Source: Chlorokybus atmophyticus | Lineage: Eukaryota > Plantae > Mesostigma and Chlorokybus algae | DNA length: 64,000 nucleotides | Assembly: GCA_009103225.1 (NCBI GenBank) | Contig: RHPI01001037.1 | Location: forward strand, 1,154,916 to 1,218,915 | Direction: 5' to 3' | Shown here: one piece after another, positions 1-10,600 of the stretch | Layout of the letters: every line of letters starts with the position of its first letter | Numbering within the stretch: position 1 is the first letter of the stretch | Made by a program: the position numbers and the translations under genes | Notes under the pieces: generated by a model | The model's input: the letters and a program-made list of their open reading frames with translations, nothing else | Told to the model about the DNA's origin: nothing | Database searches by the model: none

Positions 1-3000
1 AAAGAGCGTGGTGGTTTCTTGGAGGAGTGTATGTTGTTGGTCCCGAACAACGCGCGTCTCGTGTTCCTTTCTGCTACCGTGCCAAATGCGAAGGAGTTTG
101 CGGATTGGGTCACCAAGATCCATAAGCAACCGTGCCATATTGTATATACGGACTTCAGACCTACCCCTTTGCAGGTAAAACACCAGCATGCCCCGTTTAG
201 GTCAAGGTACGCCTTGTAAGAGGCACGATGTTGGAACCACTGGTATGCATCGTCAAGTTGTAGATGCGCCACCACCTCTTCTTTCACAGCACTTCATCTT
301 TCCGGCTGGCGGAGATGGGATATTCCTTGTCGTGGATGAGAAGTCCAAGTTCAGGCAGGACCACTTTCAGAAGGCCATGGACATGCTGTCGGCAGCAACT
401 CAGGTATGAAGCCTGGCTTGGAAGTTCATTTGCATTCTTTGCACTCAAACGTGAGTACTTAGTGCTTCCTGATGTTCATGCACTGTATTTGTTTAGTTTA
501 TGATGGTGTCCACTGGTTTATGCAGTTCAGTATGTACAGTTTGTTGCGTTCGCCTCTGGTAGTGGCACCCATGTCCAGATATGTCAGTCAACGCTCGGGT
601 GATGTTTGGTGACCATGCAGGCTGATGCGAACAAGAAGTCTATCAGCGGTCCTAGTGACATCTACAAGCTCGTGCGCATGGTCATGGCCAAGCACTGTGA
701 TCCCTGCATTGTGTTTAGCTTCAGCAAGCGTCAGTGCGAGGCTCATGCCCTTCAGATGGCTGACCTCGATCTCAATGATGACGAGGAGAGAATATTGGTG
801 GAAGGCATGTGCAACAATGCGATAAAGTCCCTCAGCGATGATGACAAGCGATTGCCGCAGGTGCTGTGCCCAATAGATGCAACTTGTGTGGTGCAATACA
901 AGAATGTTGTGCTGTATGTGGCGGTCAGCATGTCGTCATGTGACCTGAGATCAAAATACCTGAGTTGCCAGAGCACAGAGCAGGAAGTAGCCAGTTGACC
1001 TTGTGTATCTGATACATGCAGGTGACAGCAATTCTGCCTCTCTTGAGGCGCGGCATCGGCGTGCATTATTCCGGGTTGTTGCCTATCATCAAAGAGGTCA
1101 TTGAGATATTGTTCCAGGTATTGGTGGTGGCATCTCATGTCTGTGCGCTGCATCATTGTTGCATCGTCAAGCAGCGAGCAAAGCTCAACACTGAGTTGCA
1201 TGCACATTGCAGCAAGGCTTGTTGAAGGTTCTTTTTGCCACCGAGACTTGCAGCATCGGCCTCAATATGCCGGCTAAGACTGTCATCTTCACCTCCGTAC
1301 GCAAATTTGATGGCGAGGACTTTCACTGGATATCATCCGGCGAGTACATTCAGGTACACTTGTACCACACATGTTGTCATGTGCCAACCCTATTGCACCT
1401 CCCACCCTATCATAATGTTCGAATTTGTACTTGTGTGTTTGTCAAACAGATGAGTGGAAGGGCAGGTCGAAGGGGTTTGGATGACAGAGGGGTTGTCATT
1501 CTCATGGTGGATGAGCGGATGGAGCCCAGCGTGGCAAAGGGCATGTTGAAGGGCCGAACTGACACGCTTGACTCCAGCTTGCACCTGTCGTACTCAACCC
1601 TTCTCAACATGCTGCGCATGGAAGACGCTTTGCCTGAGTGTCTACTGCGGAACAGCTATAAGCAGTTTCAGACCGACAGGTCTCTTCCGCATCTTAGGGT
1701 ATGCTGGTGTGCTGCTGTCCGTGCTTGTGCGCATGCTGTACCGAGTCTCACAACTTTGCTATAGAGAAAGGTGGAGGATCTGGAGGCCAAGCGGGCAGCG
1801 ATTGAGATTGAAGGTGAAACAGAGTTGGAAGACTTCTATTCGCTTCGGCGACAACTATCTGAGCTGCGTGCAGAGTTGAGGCAACAGGTAAGCGTGACTG
1901 GACGACGACTGCAATGGTGTCGTGTTGTTAAGCATGACATAAGCTCGACCGCAAAGCTGGCGTGCAAGCATTGTTGTCGCTGGTCGGGAAAGTGGTATGT
2001 ATGCTGTGCACAAGTAGCATTGTATCAGGAACTGAAGATGTCACACAACCCCAGCAGGTTGACAGCAACGCCAACAAAAAGCTTGCTCAACGCATTGAAA
2101 CGCTGGAAGGCATGCTGCGCAAGCATCCACAGATGAAGCGGGCAGACGCAGCTGACTCCCTTCAGCTTATTACACAGAAGGCCCAGCTGGCAGTGGAGAT
2201 ACAACATCTGAAACTGGAAGAAAAATCTGCTTGCTCCATGGTGTTAATATCTGAGTTGAACGCAAAGCGGCAATTGTTAAAGCGATTAGGCTACATTGAT
2301 GAAGCTGGAGTTGTACAGGTGGGTAGCTTGGTAGCTATCGTAGCTATTGGATTGTAGAGGCGTTGGAGGTTGCAGATCAGTCTTTGTGATGAAGTTGCCA
2401 TCTCTATCAGCAGCGCCCAGTGAAGTTGGATCGAAGCCGCTTCTATTGGTCACTGCTGATTGAAGATGCACTCATTGTTAATCTTGTGATCTGTTGAATA
2501 TGCAGGTCAAGGGTCGTGTAGCTTCTGAGATCTCCTGCGCGGATGAGTTGGTTCTGACCGAGATGATATGCAATGGAGCATTCAATGAGCTCACCCCCGA
2601 GGAGACAGCGGCGCTGTGCTCATGTTTTGTTTGGTCGGAGAAGGTTAACTCCGAAGCTGCCACGCTTACAGAGCCGCTTGTTGAAGCACTTGGCGTGTTG
2701 CAGGACACTGCGCTGCGAGTGGGGAAGGTAAGTTAACATATGCATAGGCACTCCATAGCAACTTAGAACAGCTATTGGGTAGGCGTTGTCATTGGATGCA
2801 TGTGGAGACCATTTTGAATCTGATGTCACATTACTGTCAGTATGAGTGTGAGCGTTTCGGCATTGTCATTTGACAATCTTCCCTGGCCAACCCAGTGGTG
2901 TTTGTATTGCAGGTGGCTACTGAATGCAAGGTGGAGTTGGATGTAGACAAGTATGCAAACTCTTTTCGGACTGACTTCGTGGAGGCGGTGTATGCTTGGG

Positions 3001-4740
3001 CTAGAGGGGCCAAGTTCTCAGAGGTATTGTTGTGCTGTTTTTCAGCACAGCACTTGTTCCGTTGCTGCGATAGGTTGGTCGTGCAAAAGGCCAACCCTTA
3101 AGTTGCGCAGGTGTTGCAGCTGTGCAAGGTGTCTGACGGCAGTCTCATATGTGCACTTCAGCGTCTGGAGAAACTGCTCCAACAAATGTTTGCTGCAGCA
3201 CGTGCACTTGGTGAAACAGATGTTGAGGTCAGGTTTGAGGATGCCATCAAGACAATCAAGCACGGGGTTGTTTTTGGAATGTCTTTGGAGGACAATACAG
3301 AGCGGCAGGAGAAGGCAGATGGCTTGCCATACAGCCAGTTTGGGAGTGATCATCTCATGCAGGTGCTTCAGCGGCTGTCTGCCCGTGATCTTTGCCAGCT
3401 TGCTGCAACCTGCCGCCGCAACCGCGAGCTTGTTGAGCGAGAGGACCTATGGCAATTCCTCTGCCGCAGAGATCTGCAGCTTGAGGGTGGCAATGGACGC
3501 AGCTGGCGGCAGGTGTACCGAGAAGCCCACACATTGGAGGCTGCCACCTGGCACGAGCTTGGGTCTGTGCAGCGGGGAGCTGGAGGTGGCGAAGCTAGCC
3601 CGCAGGCTCGTGCTTCGCATATATGTAGTTGGGCCGCTGGCAAGTTTGTTGTGTTTGGAGGCGGTTGCGACGGAGGTGAGTATAGAGGCATGCTCCTTTG
3701 TTTGCGCGTTGCTAAGTAGGCATGCAATTGTATGCTGCAGCAATGGTTGGGTTGCTATCAGCATGCAAACAGCTTGTTGCATACCTGTTTCATGCAGTAT
3801 GTGTTGTGCAGGCCGCCACCTGAATGATACTTGGACTGCTTGCATCGAATGGGTTTCGGCAAAGCCAACTTGTACCTGGCGTCGACTGCAGTTGCCCAAT
3901 CAGCCACCTGGGCGGTTCACACATTCGTGCGCTACTGTTGGAAGTTGCGTGGTTGTTTATGGCGGCATCATGGACACAGGAGCGCGCATGAGTGACACGT
4001 GGGCGCTCGACCTGGCTCGGGAAGAGCCTTGCTGGAAACAGCTGCAAGCAAGTGTATTCCCTCCAGCCAGAGGTGCAGCAGCCGCTTGCTATGCTGGGGG
4101 CAGCCGTGTCGTTGTGCATGGAGGCATAGATTCTGTGGGCAATCGGCTGTCGGACTTGTGGGTATTGGATCTCAGCAGAAGCGTTGAAGAACTCTCCTGG
4201 GAGGAAACTCCATCAGTGGGAGCTCCTACAGGACGTTCAGGTCACACACTGACATGGGTGGGCAGTGGTAAGCTTCTTATGTTCGGTGGTCGGGATCAGT
4301 CTTTCGAGGTGGTGGGAGATACATGGCTGCTAGATCTTGAGGCAGACCCGCCTCGCTGGACACAATTGAACAGTCAGGTGTCTCCCACCGGGCGCGCTGG
4401 ACATGTGACTGTGCCTATATTGGGGGGCAGGGCCTTGTTGTTTGGAGGCGAAGACTCCAACAGAGCTCGCAAGAATGATGTCTGGGTCATTGATCCTCAT
4501 GCACCCAATGTGCAGTGGCGGGAGGTGGTGTTGTTTGGTGACAAGCCAGTGCCTAGGTCTTTCCATGGAGGTGCCGTCAACGAAGATGGGACGACAGTTC
4601 TTGTGTTTGGGGGCATGATTGATGGTGCTTGTGATCCTTCCGGCATCGCAACTGGTTCCAGCTCAGAGTTGCCGCACCCAATGCCACCTCAATTTCGCTT
4701 TGATGACGACATCCGGCTTTTATCCTTGACCCAAAATTGA
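1..4740 (+). CDS. MTR4: Mtr4/HEN2-like Ski2-family RNA helicase (5'-truncated by the window edge) fused in frame to an F-box and Kelch-repeat module
   Basis: Manual GT-AG splicing gives exons <1-174, 290-403, 621-860, 1022-1117, 1213-1353, 1450-1698, 1765-1887, 2058-2318, 2506-2727, 2913-3023, 3111-3675, 3812-4740, and the frame is maintained. Ski2/Mtr4 motifs: [83 protein letters not shown] and a DSHCT-like end. There is no stop after the helicase; stop TGA is at 4738-4740. Confidence 0.9.
3279..4740 (+). CDS. F-box/Kelch-repeat module (resembles plant At1g51550-type F-box/kelch); the C-terminal half of the fusion, or a separately initiated product from ATG 3279
   Basis: F-box [34 protein letters not shown] at ~3324-3470. 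Kelch repeats follow: [16 protein letters not shown]|GRHLNDTW (intron 3676-3811), [65 protein letters not shown]. Confidence 0.85.
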
Positions 4741-5924
4741 ACCCGTTTGTGTACATTCCAACCTCTGGCACCCGTTCTGTCGTCCTTTACACATGAATTC
4801 CCAATGTGTCCTCCAGACCATGGAGTTGATCAGGCACTGACCAGCTGTGCCTATATACATGCTGCGCTGTTGTGCCATTCTGAGTTCCAAGTTGATTTAT
4901 TACTGACCTTTACTGTTTGCGTTAGATGATGTCCTTGGGTGAAAGAGCGGCCGCCGTCAACTGTCTTGTGAAGCAGGTTAGTATGTTGGACAGCTCGATT
5001 GCATTGCTACCAAGGCAGTATATGTCGATGTTCAAGCATAACTCGTTCTTTGCACAGCTGTTGCTCAGACTCATGTAGGCACTTTTACTCTCAATTAGCC
5101 ACTGGTTCTGAATTTGTTTTGGTGCACAAGCAGCAGCAGTCTGATATTGGGCCATTTGCAGCCGCCTGGTGGAGTTTGTCAGTAGACGTCATCCTTTAAC
5201 GGTAAGTATGAACAAACTTGGCTAGAACCGCCGGATGGTGTCTTGCACAAGCTAGGATGTGCCTGCACATAAAACTGGTGTATGATGTACACGCCACGTG
5301 CTCACGCTGTTTGTGTACACAAAGACAATGTTTGTATGTGTGTGGTACACTACGTTGTATTACACATGGTCTCTGTACAGTCAGTGCATATTGACAGTAT
5401 TGTGCTATATGTTGAACATTGCCTGTGTGTACATGGACGGTGTATACATGTGGTGTATCATTTTGTGTTGCTAGTAACTAGCTAAGTCTCGGTTGCTGGT
5501 GCAGGTGCAAAGCTCTCCAGGCCATCCCAGTGCAGGCCGCTGCGGGTAGCGTGCAAGTTTCATGTGCAAAAAGCCAGCTATTGCTCTGTCCCGCTGGTGG
5601 CAAGGAGATCAGGTTCAGGAATTTCATGTTGCGGTTGGCCCATCAGGTGTGCTATGGACAAGCGGCTGTATTTTAAGAACAAACAGAGCAAGAGTTAACT
5701 TTGTCGTCGTCGTCGTCGTCGTCGGGCCTAAATCACATTGCACAGGTCACTCTGCACACCGGCCTTAGAGATCTTCAATTGTATGTATTTGCGTGGTGAG
5801 TTGATTGTTCTGGATGAAAGGACAACCATTACCAAAGCCAAGCTTCTGCCGCTGCTCGTACGGTTGCAGGACTTGTCTGAGTGAACCATTGCTTGTAAGC
5901 TCCGATCCAGCTCAATAAGTATCT

Positions 5925-7190
5925 TTAGGTCATCACGTAGTATGCTGTGGGGATGATTATTTGACCTTCTACTGTTGTCCACAGATAGTGGACCCTGCTG
6001 CAGAGCGGCAGGCCAGGCGCTGCTCTGTTTATATATGTCGTCAACAGCGCGAAGCAGTTTTGTGGCCGAATCAACGACTGTAGGTTAGCACTAGGCGAGC
6101 GCATTGCATTGGAGGTTGTCAACAACGCAAGGAGCTGCATGAGCAGGTTTATGGCGATGTCAACCATGACATTCTTGGCGATGGTGCTCACTTGCTTGAT
6201 GTGTTACCGTCACCAAACATGGTAACTCACTGAACCTGCCAGCGGAGATTGGCCAACCATGGTAGGCGCACAGTAAGTGGTTGGTTGGAGCGGGCATGGA
6301 GTTTGGAGACGGGAGCAGCTGCATCAAGAGATCAGCGGTGGGGTCATCGCTGCATCGGCAACAATGTAAAGAATCGTAAACTTGGTCATCATGCACCACT
6401 TGTTGTTGATGAAAATTGCGTCATCCAAGGATTGATCATAGGCAATTTGGCCCACTTGTTTGAGAAGGCCTCGATTTGTGGCGCCTGCTTTCACCATTGC
6501 AGCCAGTGCAGGTCATCGTGGTCAGTCCTTGGACACAAAGTCACAGTGCATGGCTATGCTCAACTGCCATGAAGCATCCCGTGCCATGCATTCCTTGACA
6601 TAACACGCTTACTTTTCCTTATATCTGGATACACTTAGGTTCGTCACGCATGTCTTAGCACTGCTGAGTTGAGCAGTTACATCTGCCTGTGCCTATGCGG
6701 CATTGAGCAAACACAAACATTGAACTGAAGTCAACAATCAAATATGGTATGTTGTGTTTACGTTGAGAGTGTATAGATAATGCGGAATACAATAGCCCAT
6801 GCATAGCATCAAGCCTAGGTATCACCACAGCAGCACACAGCAAGCCATCAACGCGACGTTCCGCATTGCATGTGCAATTGAACACCGGGCTATTCAGCTC
6901 CTTGACCTAGCTCACTACCTGTAGCATCCCACTGGTCATGCAAGCATGCAATTCACGCATAAGCATCTGCCCACAGGGGCTGCTGTGCGCACGTGGAGTG
7001 GCGACAGTTGTGTATGGTAAAAGAGTTGCCAACTCTTTTACCCTACACACCATTGATTCTCAACAGTGTGGCATACTGTTGACAACCAATGCTGACTTCA
7101 CAGTGATCATCCCATCAAGACTGCACCATGCACTACATGGACTGTCCGGCGCGAAAGTGTTGTTGTTGCTTACATGAAAAGGGTTCATTT
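5925..7190 (-). CDS. Possible unannotated multi-exon gene of unknown product
   Basis: Several minus-strand segments have AG/GT boundaries and join in frame: MLMRELHACMTSGMLQ | AQADVTAQLSSAKTCVTNLSVSRYKEK | TDHDDLHWLQC | DDPTADLLMQLLPSPNSMPAPTNHLLCAYHGWPISAGRF. Start and end are not resolved and no family is recognised. Confidence 0.3.
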
Positions 7191-7685: not shown

Positions 7686-10600
7686 ATGGCCGATTACATG
7701 GCCCGCAGCTGCACCATGGGCCGGTGCGCCCCAGAAGACGGTGCTCCGGCTTTGGAAGCAGGCCTCGCTGCTAACGGCTGCGTTGTCGCCGTCCGCAAGG
7801 TGCTACGCTGTGAGTTGTATGCCCTCCATGGTCTTGCATGCTTTCTTGCATGTTGTTGGCCTGCATTGCGCTTAACCAGCTATGACGGCAACATCTTGTG
7901 CTGCAATATACCCATGCATGCCGTTCAGTCGGTGTGCTTACACGCAGAGAATGTCCAGTTAGGTGTTGTCAGCGAGGTCATAGCCGTGCCTTACGTGTGC
8001 GGTGTGCTAGCAGTCTGTACATAAGCGCTGTCTGTTGTCGCATCCAACAGCATCTACACACAGCATTGTCTTGCTGGGTGTCTCGCTGTCAACAGTATTC
8101 GGCAACATGTACATAAAACCATTTACGTTTATCCTCCAGATTTGTACATCAGTCAGTGCATGCATTGCTGTTGTCTGCACTTCTTAATATGCATGTCGAA
8201 AGTCAGGTGGTACATATGTCGCACGGTATCAAGTTGCAATCTACATGCTGTCACAGTGGTAGTCACGATGTCATATCAGGGCTTGCCTGGCAATTCAGGT
8301 CTGTGCTATGCATGCCACATTGTTGTGTCCTGATTGCATGTTGCAATGCAGGGAGTTGCTGTGGGCTGGCCTTGGTGCAACCGCTGCTCTGTGCATTGCA
8401 GCGCTGTTGAGATGGGTGATGTCTCGCTATGACGACGAGCCAATGCCCCCCGCATTGTACAATGACATGGGCCTCAGGCGCAGTGTCTCTTCTGCTGGTG
8501 CACCGCCATATTTGAGGAATGGTCGTGCGCTGATATCGTTGCCGCCTTCCGCAGTTCATGAAGAGAGTGAGAGCGTCGAATGGGTCAACATGGTGCTGCG
8601 GAAGGTAGGTATGCCAGTTCTTCTATCGTAAGCAGTGCATCTTATGCCTCCATAGCATGCACTGTCAATGGGTAACCATTAGGAGCTGTTGCCACATAGA
8701 GTAACTGCTGTTCTGTATTGGGTTTGTTGGAACACGACTTAAGTCCTCATCGCATCCCCAAAGTTACAAAGCGCGTGTTGTGCATAGGTGTGGTATGTTT
8801 ATCAAAGAAACTTGGAGCGATGGCTTGTGGACATCTTGCAGCCGGCTATTGATTCCCTAAGCACTCCAGCCTACGTGCGCCGCGTGGTCATAGCGGGATT
8901 CACACTTGCTGCAGAGAGCGCTACCTTTCGCAACATGCAGCGCAAATCCAGCCGCCAAGCAAATGACCTGCAGTACGTTCTGGTGCATGACTAACAGCAA
9001 CATGACACGCAATATCTAGGCAGGCAGGCGCAACTGAGTTGCGTCAACTGCAGGTACCATCTTGATCTGCGGTACACCGGAGGTGCAAAGGCATCTGTCA
9101 CAGTCAAGTTGGCCCACCCCAAGTTGAAGGCTTTGCATGGGGACATACCAATTGACGTCTACGATCTGGATGTGGACGCTCAGGTACTGTTATTGCCCAA
9201 CATAAACAGGCCAGGCAAGAGCATGTGCACTGTTGCAGCTGCAAGTATCAAGCCAGGAGTTGATTGGAGGCTTTAGTCAATGGGATGCGTGTACTAGTGC
9301 GTAGAGTAATGCTTGATGTAATCGTTTTAGTTGACATGATATTGTATTTTTACAGCTGTGGGTTAGACTGCGCCTCTCTCCAGTATCACCTTGGGTATCC
9401 AATGTAAGTCTTGCATTCGTGTCACCACCCAAGATAAGCATCAAGCTTGCGCCATTCGGCCGAGTCAACCTGATGTCCATCCCATTCATCTCGAGGTGAG
9501 CTACTTGCCACCTCCAGTGCAAGCATGGCATGTTCCTGGCTGACTTGTACACCATTGTTGACAGTTTTCTCTCGAAGTTGTTGACGGAAGACCTGCCGGC
9601 CATGTTCATTTTTCCTAAGTGCATTCGATTTGACATCAAGCCCACAGAATCTGCTGTTGCAGCTGCCATGGTTGCGAATGGAGGCAAGCAGCTCAGTGCC
9701 ATGCCACCTCCAGCACATGACTCTTTTGTTGGAGAGCTGTCTGTCACCCTGCGAGAGGCGCGCGGTCTCCCAACCGTGCGTTTTCTCAGTAAGTTCCCTA
9801 GTAGTATGTTGTACTACATGGCGACATGGCGACATGACCAATGCGGTTTGCTGCAAAGCTTGTGACATTCTGCCATGCTGCTTGCTGACCCGCCAGTCTG
9901 CAGGATGGGGCCGCAGTGATCCTTACTGCGTTTTGTCGCTGGGCACGCAAGTGCGCCAAAGCAAGCGCAACACGGATACTTCGTTCGTGCCAGCAAACTC
10001 TTCCTCTGCAGTCTGGAACCAAAGCTTCAGTTTCTTGGTGGAGGACCCACGTGAACAAATGCTGACCATTCGCATCCGCGACGCCGCTTCTCTTAATCTG
10101 AACATTGGCTTTTTAGAGGTAAGACATGCCCTCTTCCCGCAAGTGTGTGCCGTTGTTTATTGGTTGGGCTTGTTGTTACAAGTATACATTGGCAGGTTGA
10201 AATCAAGGACTTGGAAGAAGGCGTGGTGGCAGACATGTGGTTCCCCCTCCAAAAGAAGCTTCCTTCCGGTCAGGCTGTTTTGACAAAAGGTCAGGTCAGG
10301 CTAGAGCTGGAGTACAAGTCTTTCGTGGAGGAAGCGCCGCAGACGCCGGTTGCTGAGGAGTTGACTGATGAGCTCGGGAGGTCTGCTGTCGACGCCAGGG
10401 ACCGGAAGAAGTCGGAAGAAGCTGATGCCGTGGAGGAGCTTGCGCAAGTACACGGCGATGCGATGGCAGAAGACTTGGTGGGCGCATTGTCGGACGATAT
10501 AAAGGAGGTTGCGGAAGCCAGCGATGCAGCGGATAGTGCTGCCAGTGCCACGCGTGAGAGTGCTGATGAGTTGCAGGAGATGGCCGATGTTGCAGACGAT

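What the first reader, a model, noticed from the sequence alone, without database searches (positions are those of the whole stretch)
3111..4740. RNA-exosome helicase fused in frame to an F-box/Kelch E3-ligase substrate receptor
Seen in sequence: exon 3111-3675 carries the end of the Mtr4 DSHCT domain (..[17 protein letters not shown]). Where Mtr4/HEN2 proteins end in SLYL*, it reads on without a stop or intron ([12 protein letters not shown]) into an F-box and then a full set of Kelch repeats. Both halves keep intact frames and splice sites. Established knowledge: Mtr4/HEN2 feed RNA to the nuclear exosome, F-box/Kelch proteins are SCF substrate adaptors, and the Kelch part resembles the standalone plant At1g51550 type. 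I know of no described helicase-F-box-Kelch chimera. Inference: the product could be an RNA-guided ubiquitin-ligase adaptor coupling RNP recognition to ubiquitylation. It could instead be a young chimera formed when a helicase duplicate captured a neighbouring F-box gene.
Basis: partly seen in the sequence, partly recalled or inferred. Interest (0 to 1): 0.9.

Follow-up and report, generated by a model that had tools for sequence, protein, structure and literature searches.

The report
Mtr4-type helicase fused to F-box/Kelch
In this alga (probably Chlorokybus) a gene for an RNA-unwinding motor of the nuclear RNA-disposal pathway lost its stop codon and now reads straight into a protein-tagging (ubiquitin ligase) adaptor. 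The joined message is really made, and nothing like it turned up in any other organism searched.

Summary
RNA-supported exons form one open frame of 1075 codons in the window; the N-terminus lies off the window. The frame holds an Mtr4-clade DExH helicase that ends two residues short of the canonical ...SLYL stop. A roughly 20-residue flexible linker follows, then an F-box and six Kelch repeats, with the stop at 4738-4740.

Spliced RNA contigs from two independent studies (2013 and 2021) cross the junction. They show no mismatch, no intron and no stop, so assembly error is excluded.

The F-box/Kelch half is an orthologue of the plant At1g51550 family. It shares that family's phase-1 intron exactly with Marchantia and Chara. 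It is free-standing in Coleochaete, Chara, Mesotaenium, Marchantia and seed plants.

A length-unrestricted phmmer scan of 1.84 billion representative proteins found no protein carrying both halves.

The helicase half keeps motifs III-VI but lacks the KOW/beta-barrel of the arch.

The fusion is real, expressed and apparently lineage-restricted. Its function, an SCF adaptor tethered to an RNA helicase, is inference only. Three things remain open: a separate F-box/Kelch transcript from an internal start, the Mtr4-versus-HEN2 assignment, and conservation in sister Chlorokybus species. I class it as a new variant of known kinds, of moderate interest.

The parts
1..174 (+). Helicase exon (RecA1 end, motif III SAT); the gene continues upstream of the window
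   Evidence: Open frame and GT donor. RNA joint 171->287; X1 contig 1 extends 280 nt beyond the window start.
290..403 (+). Helicase exon
621..860 (+). Helicase exon (motif IV region)
   Evidence: Aligns to plant MTR4 P0048.
1022..1117 (+). Helicase exon
   Evidence: RNA joints 856->1018 and 1114->1210 in X1 and X2.
1213..1353 (+). Helicase exon (motif [13 protein letters not shown])
1450..1698 (+). Helicase exon (motif [12 protein letters not shown], winged helix, start of stalk)
   Evidence: PDB sequence search: Mtr4/Dob1 99 bits, human MTR4 92, Ski2 34-42. Pfam stalk positions 1-20.
1765..1887 (+). Ascending stalk helix of the arch
   Evidence: Pfam MTR4-like_stalk positions 23-61 of 64, E 4e-9.
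1885..2060 (+). Site of the missing KOW/beta-barrel (intron 1888-2054 plus flanking codons)
   Evidence: Against plant MTR4, query 376->388 corresponds to subject 303->448, so about 145 residues are absent. Only beta-barrel profile positions 150-200 of 203 remain. Joint 1884->2052 is seen in X1 and in the roughly 3% diverged X3.
2055..2318 (+). Descending stalk helix
2506..2727 (+). DSHCT exon
   Evidence: Pfam DSHCT positions 7-81, E 1.4e-19.
2913..3023 (+). DSHCT exon
   Evidence: Pfam DSHCT positions 85-116. Joined to 3111 in X1 and X2.
3111..3287 (+). Last DSHCT helices, ending ...GVVFGMSL; the canonical final YL and stop are absent
   Evidence: Pfam DSHCT positions 118-171 of 172. Alignment A1. 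AlphaFold helices 9-32 and 36-58, pLDDT 80-90.
3279..3281 (+). In-frame ATG at the junction; a possible start for a free-standing F-box/Kelch product
   Evidence: No direct TSS evidence either way.
3288..3344 (+). Linker of about 20 residues ([12 protein letters not shown]...)
   Evidence: Low pLDDT (48-58) and no secondary structure at residues 59-78. Corresponds to the variable N-terminal leaders of free-standing orthologues.
3345..3476 (+). F-box
   Evidence: Pfam F-box-like 35.2 bits and F-box 28.6 bits, both above their cut-offs. Helices 79-122 with pLDDT above 90.
3477..3675 (+). Connector helix and first Kelch blade; the exon ends in phase 1 inside ...GGGCDGG
   Evidence: The intron position is identical in Marchantia L001 and Chara L003.
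3812..4740 (+). Kelch blades (rest of 1, then 2-6), conserved C-terminal tail, stop at 4738-4740
   Evidence: Pfam Kelch families, E 4e-43. 38-42% identity to At1g51550-family proteins, E down to 5e-68. Continuous in X1 and X2 contigs.

Best explanation
This is a genuine, transcribed gene fusion in a Chlorokybus-type streptophyte alga. An Mtr4-clade DExH RNA helicase has already lost the KOW/beta-barrel head of its arch. Its last two codons and stop were replaced so that its final exon runs directly into exon 1 of the orthologue of the plant F-box/Kelch gene At1g51550.

The predicted product has, in order: the helicase core, the winged helix, the bare stalk, the DSHCT bundle, a roughly 20-residue flexible linker, the F-box and a six-blade Kelch propeller.

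Shown here: the continuous frame, the domain identities, the spliced RNA across the junction in two data sets, the shared intron position with Marchantia and Chara, and the absence of the combination elsewhere.

Inferred: the F-box recruits SKP1/CUL1, so the protein would be an SCF substrate receptor permanently tethered to a 3'-to-5' RNA translocase. The Kelch propeller either selects a protein substrate on helicase-bound RNPs or supplies the partner-docking surface that the lost KOW domain used to provide. FBH1 is the analogy: an F-box DNA helicase that works as SCF(FBH1) on RAD51.
For: One frame of 1075 codons runs over 12 exons with all GT-AG introns.

Pfam finds DSHCT to position 171 of 172, then an F-box above its cut-off, then Kelch at E 4e-43.

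The helicase is Mtr4-clade, not Ski2: 99 bits against about 40. Motifs III, IV, V and VI are retained.

X1 contig 3 (2021) runs 2097->4831 through five splices. X2 contig 5 (2013) runs 2916-3021 plus 3109-3522. Both have zero mismatches or gaps at the junction. Both hold 10 of 10 sampled junction words.

The helicase frame has no stop before 4738, so any helicase protein with a complete DSHCT must carry the F-box/Kelch.

Mtr4 hits end two residues after query residue 59, and F-box/Kelch hits begin near residue 70. No hit has both halves.

The Kelch half belongs to the At1g51550 family and has the identical phase-1 intron.

The linker is predicted flexible and both flanking modules are confidently folded.

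The FBH1 precedent is documented in PMC4148199 and PMC12946210.
Against: The RNA evidence comes from assembled contigs, not single molecules. They cannot exclude a second, shorter transcript that starts just upstream of ATG 3279.

Contig depth in X2 rises 5'->3' (about 5, 7.8, 8.4, 9.3). That fits either 3' bias or an extra internal start.

Differences from two diverged Chlorokybus runs in the helicase exons are 7 nonsynonymous to 4 synonymous. This hints at relaxed constraint in the winged-helix/stalk region.

Conserved DSHCT positions are altered: EGSxIR reads DGSLIC. The F-box lacks the usual LP proline.

The N-terminal third of the helicase, including motifs I and II and the exosome-binding region, is off the window.

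No SKP1, exosome or substrate interaction has been tested.
Confidence: 0.7

Rival explanations
1. There are two functional outputs, with the helicase in decline. The F-box/Kelch protein would be made mainly from its own start (ATG 3279) on transcripts that begin inside or just before the junction exon. The helicase exons would be a divergent, KOW-less duplicate that lost its stop and survives as a read-through 5' extension of little function.
For: There is an in-frame ATG exactly at the junction with G at -3. X2 contig depth is higher over the F-box/Kelch part than over the 5' helicase exons. Helicase exon differences between Chlorokybus lineages are 7 nonsynonymous to 4 synonymous. Identity to a plant MTR4 is only 39-43%, the KOW is lost, and conserved DSHCT residues are altered. 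At1g51550 orthologues work as free-standing proteins everywhere else.
Against: The 637 helicase codons in 11 exons remain open with intact splice sites and are correctly spliced in RNA. Motifs III-VI are close to yeast and plant Mtr4. The KOW-less splice is shared with a roughly 3% diverged lineage, so the frame has stayed open since before that split. The depth gradient is smooth rather than a step at 3279. The substitution sample (11 changes) is too small to prove neutrality.
Confidence: 0.17
2. The fusion is real, but it does not act as a ubiquitin ligase. The Kelch propeller would act as a replacement protein-docking head for the lost KOW domain, retargeting the helicase to new partners. 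The F-box would be a structural spacer or a handle for the helicase's own turnover.
For: Loss of the KOW/beta-barrel coincides with gain of a propeller in the same gene. The KOW domain is the RNA- and adaptor-binding part of the Mtr4 arch and is needed for exosome activation (PMC3384339 and PMC3592479). The F-box departs from family consensus at the LP proline and at two aromatic positions.
Against: The F-box scores as well as or better than those of its free-standing orthologues in Pfam (35.2 bits against 21.6-33.7). It folds confidently. The propeller sits at the C-terminus behind a flexible linker, not on the stalk where the KOW was.
Confidence: 0.1
3. The fusion is an assembly or reading artefact: a missed stop, a frameshift, or two loci joined by mis-assembly.
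For: None was found. A single-genome observation always carries this risk beforehand.
Against: Two RNA data sets from different studies and years reproduce 3109-3673 letter for letter. They splice it to helicase exons on one side and to the Kelch exon on the other. One of them differs from the window at a synonymous site (4098), so it is not the same data re-used.
Confidence: 0.02

Closest known systems
Mtr4 / Dob1 / SKIV2L2 and plant MTR4 (DExH9) / HEN2 (DExH10) nuclear exosome helicases
   Same: DExH core motifs III-VI, winged helix, stalk helices and DSHCT bundle. It scores 99 bits to yeast Mtr4 on one 83-residue exon. It is 39-43% identical to a plant MTR4 model, about the level AtMTR4 and HEN2 share with each other and with yeast Mtr4 (43%; PMC4140647).
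   Different: It lacks about 145 residues of the KOW/beta-barrel. It lacks the terminal YL and stop. It carries a 438-residue C-terminal F-box/Kelch extension. Several invariant DSHCT residues are changed. Whether it is the MTR4 orthologue, the HEN2 orthologue or a third paralogue was not resolved.
F-box/kelch-repeat protein At1g51550 family (streptophytes; function uncharacterised)
   Same: F-box plus six Kelch blades plus a conserved tail. It is 38-42% identical over the whole Kelch exon, with best named hits 'At1g51550'. The phase-1 intron inside GGGC(D/E)GG is identical in Marchantia and Chara.
   Different: Orthologues are free-standing proteins of 440-570 residues with their own N-terminal leader. 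Here the leader is replaced by a helicase. No helicase lies within 10 kb upstream in Marchantia or Chara.
FBH1 / FBXO18 (F-box DNA helicase 1)
   Same: It is the well-studied case of a helicase and an F-box in one polypeptide. It acts as SCF(FBH1) and ubiquitylates a protein (RAD51) bound to the nucleic acid it translocates on (PMC4148199 and PMC12946210).
   Different: FBH1 is an SF1 UvrD-type DNA helicase with an N-terminal F-box and no separate substrate-binding propeller. This protein is an SF2 DExH RNA helicase with a C-terminal F-box plus Kelch. The two are analogous, not homologous.
Neurospora FRH (Mtr4 homologue) with FRQ and the F-box protein FWD-1
   Same: An Mtr4-type helicase operates in one pathway with an SCF F-box/beta-propeller receptor. 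This rests on established knowledge; FRH structures appeared as hits.
   Different: Those are separate proteins, the propeller is WD40 and the context is the circadian clock. There is no evidence of any relation to this gene.

Membership tests
Mtr4-type Ski2-like DExH RNA helicase | SF2 DExH core motifs | tested here: inconclusive
   Motifs III (SAT), IV, V ([12 protein letters not shown]) and VI ([10 protein letters not shown]) are present. Motifs I and II lie upstream of the window and could not be read.
Mtr4-type Ski2-like DExH RNA helicase | Closer to Mtr4 than to Ski2 or Brr2 | tested here: met
   Mtr4/Dob1 99 bits, human MTR4 92 and FRH 81, against Ski2/SKI2W 34-42.
Mtr4-type Ski2-like DExH RNA helicase | Arch with stalk and KOW/beta-barrel | tested here: not met
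   The stalk is present (Pfam PF21408, 37 bits). The beta-barrel is reduced to profile positions 150-200 of 203 and falls below the cut-off. About 145 residues are missing relative to plant MTR4.
Mtr4-type Ski2-like DExH RNA helicase | C-terminal DSHCT bundle that ends the protein (...SLYL-stop) | tested here: not met
   The DSHCT is complete to profile position 171 of 172, but the protein does not end there. YL and the stop are replaced by the linker and F-box.
Plant MTR4 versus HEN2 subfamily | Placement in a phylogeny with labelled MTR4 and HEN2 sequences | not tested
   No labelled HEN2 sequences could be obtained under the length rule of the homologue search. The nearest C-terminal fragments include one named DExH9 (MTR4).
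F-box protein (SCF substrate receptor) | F-box domain above the curated threshold | tested here: met
   PF12937 scores 35.2 bits (cut-off 24.3) and PF00646 scores 28.6 (cut-off 20.5). The helices are confidently folded.
F-box protein (SCF substrate receptor) | Binds SKP1 and assembles with CUL1 | not testable with these tools
   This needs yeast two-hybrid or co-immunoprecipitation. The LP proline is replaced by S.
At1g51550-type F-box/Kelch family | Best reciprocal similarity, same architecture and same gene structure | tested here: met
   Top named hits are At1g51550 proteins with E down to 1e-61. There are six Kelch repeats (read from the translation; Pfam). The intron phase and position are identical in Marchantia and Chara.
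FBH1-type F-box helicase | N-terminal F-box on an SF1 UvrD-like DNA helicase | tested here: not met
   The helicase is an SF2 Mtr4 type and the F-box lies C-terminal to it. FBH1 is an analogue only.

The most novel reading that the evidence does not exclude
The fusion may be a 'Rosetta stone'. It would then reveal that the conserved but uncharacterised streptophyte F-box/Kelch protein At1g51550 works with the Mtr4/HEN2 nuclear RNA-surveillance helicases in plants generally. For example, it could ubiquitylate a helicase cofactor or proteins stuck on exosome substrates. In Chlorokybus the fused protein would be an RNA-translocating SCF ligase that clears proteins from RNPs.
Probability: 0.15. 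Interest if true: 0.8.

Novelty: new variant of a known kind. Interest (0 to 1): 0.55.

Why it matters
Both modules are well known, but this searching found them nowhere else in one polypeptide. I also found no RNA helicase of the exosome pathway reported with a built-in SCF receptor. If the product is made and binds SKP1, it would be the RNA counterpart of FBH1. It would also give a concrete, testable hypothesis for At1g51550, an orphan F-box gene conserved from streptophyte algae to crops. In addition, it is a natural 'KOW-less' Mtr4, useful for asking what the arch head is for. If the helicase part turns out to be decaying, the locus instead shows how stop-codon loss creates chimeric genes.

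Tried and rejected
- **Homologue search with the junction exon** (candidates of 103-329 aa): no hit. This only shows that this alga's transcript fragments are not in that collection.
- **JGI metagenome contigs searched with the junction exon:** 95 pattern matches, none confirmed.
- **ESM Atlas feature search:** only F-box or Kelch clusters, none with DSHCT.
- **P0021 and P0110:** phmmer aligned both across the junction, but on inspection one is a plain F-box/Kelch fragment with a long leader and the other is an MTR4 fragment read into an intron.
- **Mesostigma orthologue P0230:** the gene model lacks the F-box and blade 1, so it says nothing about fusion there. Its locus is not on record.
- **Synteny:** no helicase similarity within 10 kb upstream of the orthologue in Marchantia or Chara.
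- **Mtr4 versus HEN2:** I tried to name the 'RG..F'-type C-terminal fragments through cluster look-ups, but none carried a useful name.
- **Sister Chlorokybus species:** X3 held 0.39 of the sampled words of 2900-4800, yet it gave no laid contig there and was not listed for the junction stretch.
- **Scan notes for paralogues:** nothing found by words or by sequence.
- **Literature:** no paper combines DSHCT or Mtr4 with an F-box fusion, none links Chlorokybus with these terms, and At1g51550 appears only in gene lists.
- **Unused:** the third homologue search was not run because no query that could be given by reference would answer the remaining questions.

Full report
**1. What is in the sequence**

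I read window 1-6000 and took exon ends from the RNA joints. Splicing 12 exons gives one open frame of 1075 codons that ends at TGA 4738-4740. The exons are 1-174, 290-403, 621-860, 1022-1117, 1213-1353, 1450-1698, 1765-1887, 2055-2318, 2506-2727, 2913-3023, 3111-3675 and 3812-4740. All introns are GT-AG. The ten helicase exons before the junction exon are all in phase 0. The gene starts upstream of the window: X1 contig 1 has 280 nt before position 1.

Pfam results:
- DSHCT spreads over exons 2506-2727, 2913-3023 and 3111 onward, reaching profile position 171 of 172 at residue 55 of the junction exon.
- The F-box and F-box-like models match residues 79-120 of the same exon, at 28.6 and 35.2 bits, both above their cut-offs.
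- Kelch propeller families match the last exon (PF24681, E 4e-43).

**2. The breakpoint**

Alignment A1 and the list of Mtr4 C-termini show that Mtr4-type proteins end ...(D/G)I(V/I)FAASLYL-stop. The window reads ...GVVFGMSL and then continues [30 protein letters not shown] into the F-box. Only the last two residues and the stop of the helicase are missing.

Free-standing F-box/Kelch orthologues carry variable leaders of 10-50 residues before the same F-box.

An AlphaFold model of the junction exon was built on 15 aligned sequences (mean pLDDT 73.9). It gives two confident DSHCT helices (residues 9-58) and an unstructured, low-confidence stretch at 59-78. Confident F-box helices follow at 79-122, then the first Kelch strands. 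The two modules are therefore joined by a flexible linker of about 20 residues.

**3. Is it transcribed as one piece, and could it be an artefact?**

Four RNA runs were laid on 1-6000.
- X1 (2021) contig 3 is 2985 nt long. It runs from 2097 through joints 2315->2503, 2725->2911, 3021->3109 and 3673->3810 and on to 4831. It is unbroken across 3109-3673.
- X2 (2013, another study) contig 5 covers 2916-3021 plus 3109-3522.
- Neither run shows any other letter, gap or joint inside 3109-3673.
- Both runs hold 10 of 10 sampled words of 3215-3355.
- X1 differs from the window at 4098, a synonymous G>C change, so it is an independent sample.

This excludes a missed stop or a chimeric assembly.

One caveat remains. 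These are assembled contigs, so they do not prove single molecules and cannot exclude an extra transcript that begins just upstream of 3279. X2 contig depths rise from about 5 over the helicase exons to 7.8, 8.4 and 9.3 over the junction and Kelch parts. That fits 3' bias or such a second start equally well.

The helicase frame has no stop before 4738. Any helicase protein with a complete DSHCT must therefore carry the F-box/Kelch.

**4. The helicase half**

One 83-residue exon scores 99 bits to yeast Mtr4/Dob1, 92 to human MTR4 and 81 to FRH, but only 34-42 to Ski2 proteins. This places it in the Mtr4 clade.

Against a plant MTR4 model (P0048) the two aligned blocks are 43% and 39% identical. 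Motifs III, IV, V and VI are retained. AtMTR4 and HEN2 share 43% identity with each other and with yeast Mtr4 (PMC4140647). This helicase is thus as far from plant MTR4 as a paralogue would be. I could not decide between MTR4, HEN2 and a third lineage.

The arch keeps both stalk helices, but about 145 residues of the KOW/beta-barrel are gone and about 11 residues stand in their place. This agrees with an earlier scan note on this window. The same KOW-less splice (1884->2052) is present in X3, whose contigs differ from the window by about 3%. The deletion therefore predates that split.

Several otherwise invariant DSHCT residues are changed: EGSxIR reads DGSLIC. The 11 differences seen in X3 and X4 are 7 nonsynonymous and 4 synonymous. 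That sample is small and comes from the winged-helix/stalk region, but it hints at relaxed constraint.

**5. The F-box/Kelch half**

The Kelch exon finds 149 proteins at E of 1e-5 or better. The best reach 38-42% identity over 90-100% of the exon. Many are named 'F-box/kelch-repeat protein At1g51550', and nearly all of the full-length hits are free-standing proteins of 440-510 residues.

Free-standing members also occur in Coleochaete, Chara, Mesotaenium and Marchantia.

tBLASTn on the Marchantia (L001) and Chara (L003) loci puts their intron in the same split glycine codon of GGGC(D/E)GG as the window's 3675/3812 intron. This is strong evidence of orthology and of an ancestral two-exon core.

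From the translation I count six Kelch repeats and a conserved C-terminal tail. The F-box lacks the usual LP proline, yet it scores at least as high as the orthologues' F-boxes.

At1g51550 itself appears in the held literature only in gene lists, so its substrate is unknown.

**6. Is the combination found elsewhere?**

- A phmmer scan of 1.84 billion representative proteins, with no length limit, used the junction exon as query. It gave 116 hits.
- The Mtr4-type hits match query residues 2-59, and complete ones stop two residues later. The F-box/Kelch hits start near residue 70.
- No hit has both halves. The two hits that seemed to span the junction do not.
- The ESM Atlas, JGI metagenome contigs and the literature gave nothing.
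- No helicase lies within 10 kb upstream of the orthologue in Marchantia or Chara, so there is no sign of an old neighbourhood.
- The Mesostigma model P0230 is truncated at its N-terminus and is uninformative.

The organism is taken to be Chlorokybus from an earlier scan note. The pattern of runs fits the strains and distances in PMC8611356: a 2013 multi-species study, then a 2021 study with near-identical and 3-5% diverged samples under one species label. Whether the other Chlorokybus species carry the junction could not be determined.

**7. How it most likely works**

Shown: a single expressed frame encoding helicase, linker, F-box and Kelch.

Inferred: the F-box binds SKP1/CUL1. The protein would then be an SCF substrate receptor tethered to a 3'-to-5' RNA translocase. 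The propeller would recognise a protein on helicase-bound RNPs.

FBH1 is the architectural precedent. It is an F-box DNA helicase that acts as SCF(FBH1) on RAD51 (PMC4148199 and PMC12946210). It is an analogue, not a relative.

One variant is that the propeller replaces the lost KOW head as a docking module. The KOW is needed for adaptor and RNA binding and for exosome activation (PMC3384339 and PMC3592479).

The main rival is that the F-box/Kelch is mostly made on its own from ATG 3279, with the helicase a declining duplicate.

I put about 0.7 on a real fusion protein. Conditional on that, I put roughly one-in-two odds on a true SCF-ligase role.

**8. Verdict**

The fusion is a real, expressed and apparently lineage-restricted domain fusion of two known families. 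I class it as a new variant of known kinds. It is interesting as a possible RNA counterpart of FBH1 and as a functional lead for an orphan conserved plant F-box gene. However, it is a single-lineage case with no functional data. Interest 0.55.

Noticed in passing
window 4741-6300 (+): RNA contigs of X1 and X2 continue past the fusion gene's stop. They pass through a GC-AG intron (4834-4925) and GT-AG introns 4977-5161, 5202-5504, 5647-5745 and 5895-5983. The spliced product has stops in all three frames (the longest ORF from ATG 4926 is 24 aa). Its depth in X2 is about twice that of the Kelch exon. It is probably a separate spliced non-coding RNA or a long 5' UTR that overlaps the fusion gene's 3' UTR. 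Otherwise it is a multi-intron, NMD-prone 3' UTR. X3 uses an alternative joint, 4972->5501.
   Followed up: partly
window 1765-2318 (+): The helicase has cleanly lost the KOW/beta-barrel head of its arch while keeping both stalk helices. The same splice is seen in a roughly 3% diverged Chlorokybus transcriptome (X3). It is a natural 'KOW-less' Mtr4.
   Followed up: yes
window 1450-1887 (+): X3 and X4 contigs differ from the window at 11 exonic sites, 7 of them nonsynonymous. One is H300R in the otherwise conserved FHL(S/T)Y stretch. This suggests fast protein evolution of this helicase among Chlorokybus lineages.
   Followed up: partly
window 8340-8610 (+): The next obvious + strand coding exon (...SESVEWVNMVLRK, then a GT donor) looks like the start of a synaptotagmin/tricalbin-type SMP-domain protein. 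This is a reading by eye only.
   Followed up: no
window 5900-6600 (-): Minus-strand ORFs of 79-88 aa lie antisense to the spliced + strand RNA. There may be a gene on the opposite strand.
   Followed up: no
L001 10001-12590 (Marchantia polymorpha): The Marchantia At1g51550 orthologue has an extra short first exon (residues 1-24) ahead of the F-box exon. The leader of this family is structurally variable.
   Followed up: partly
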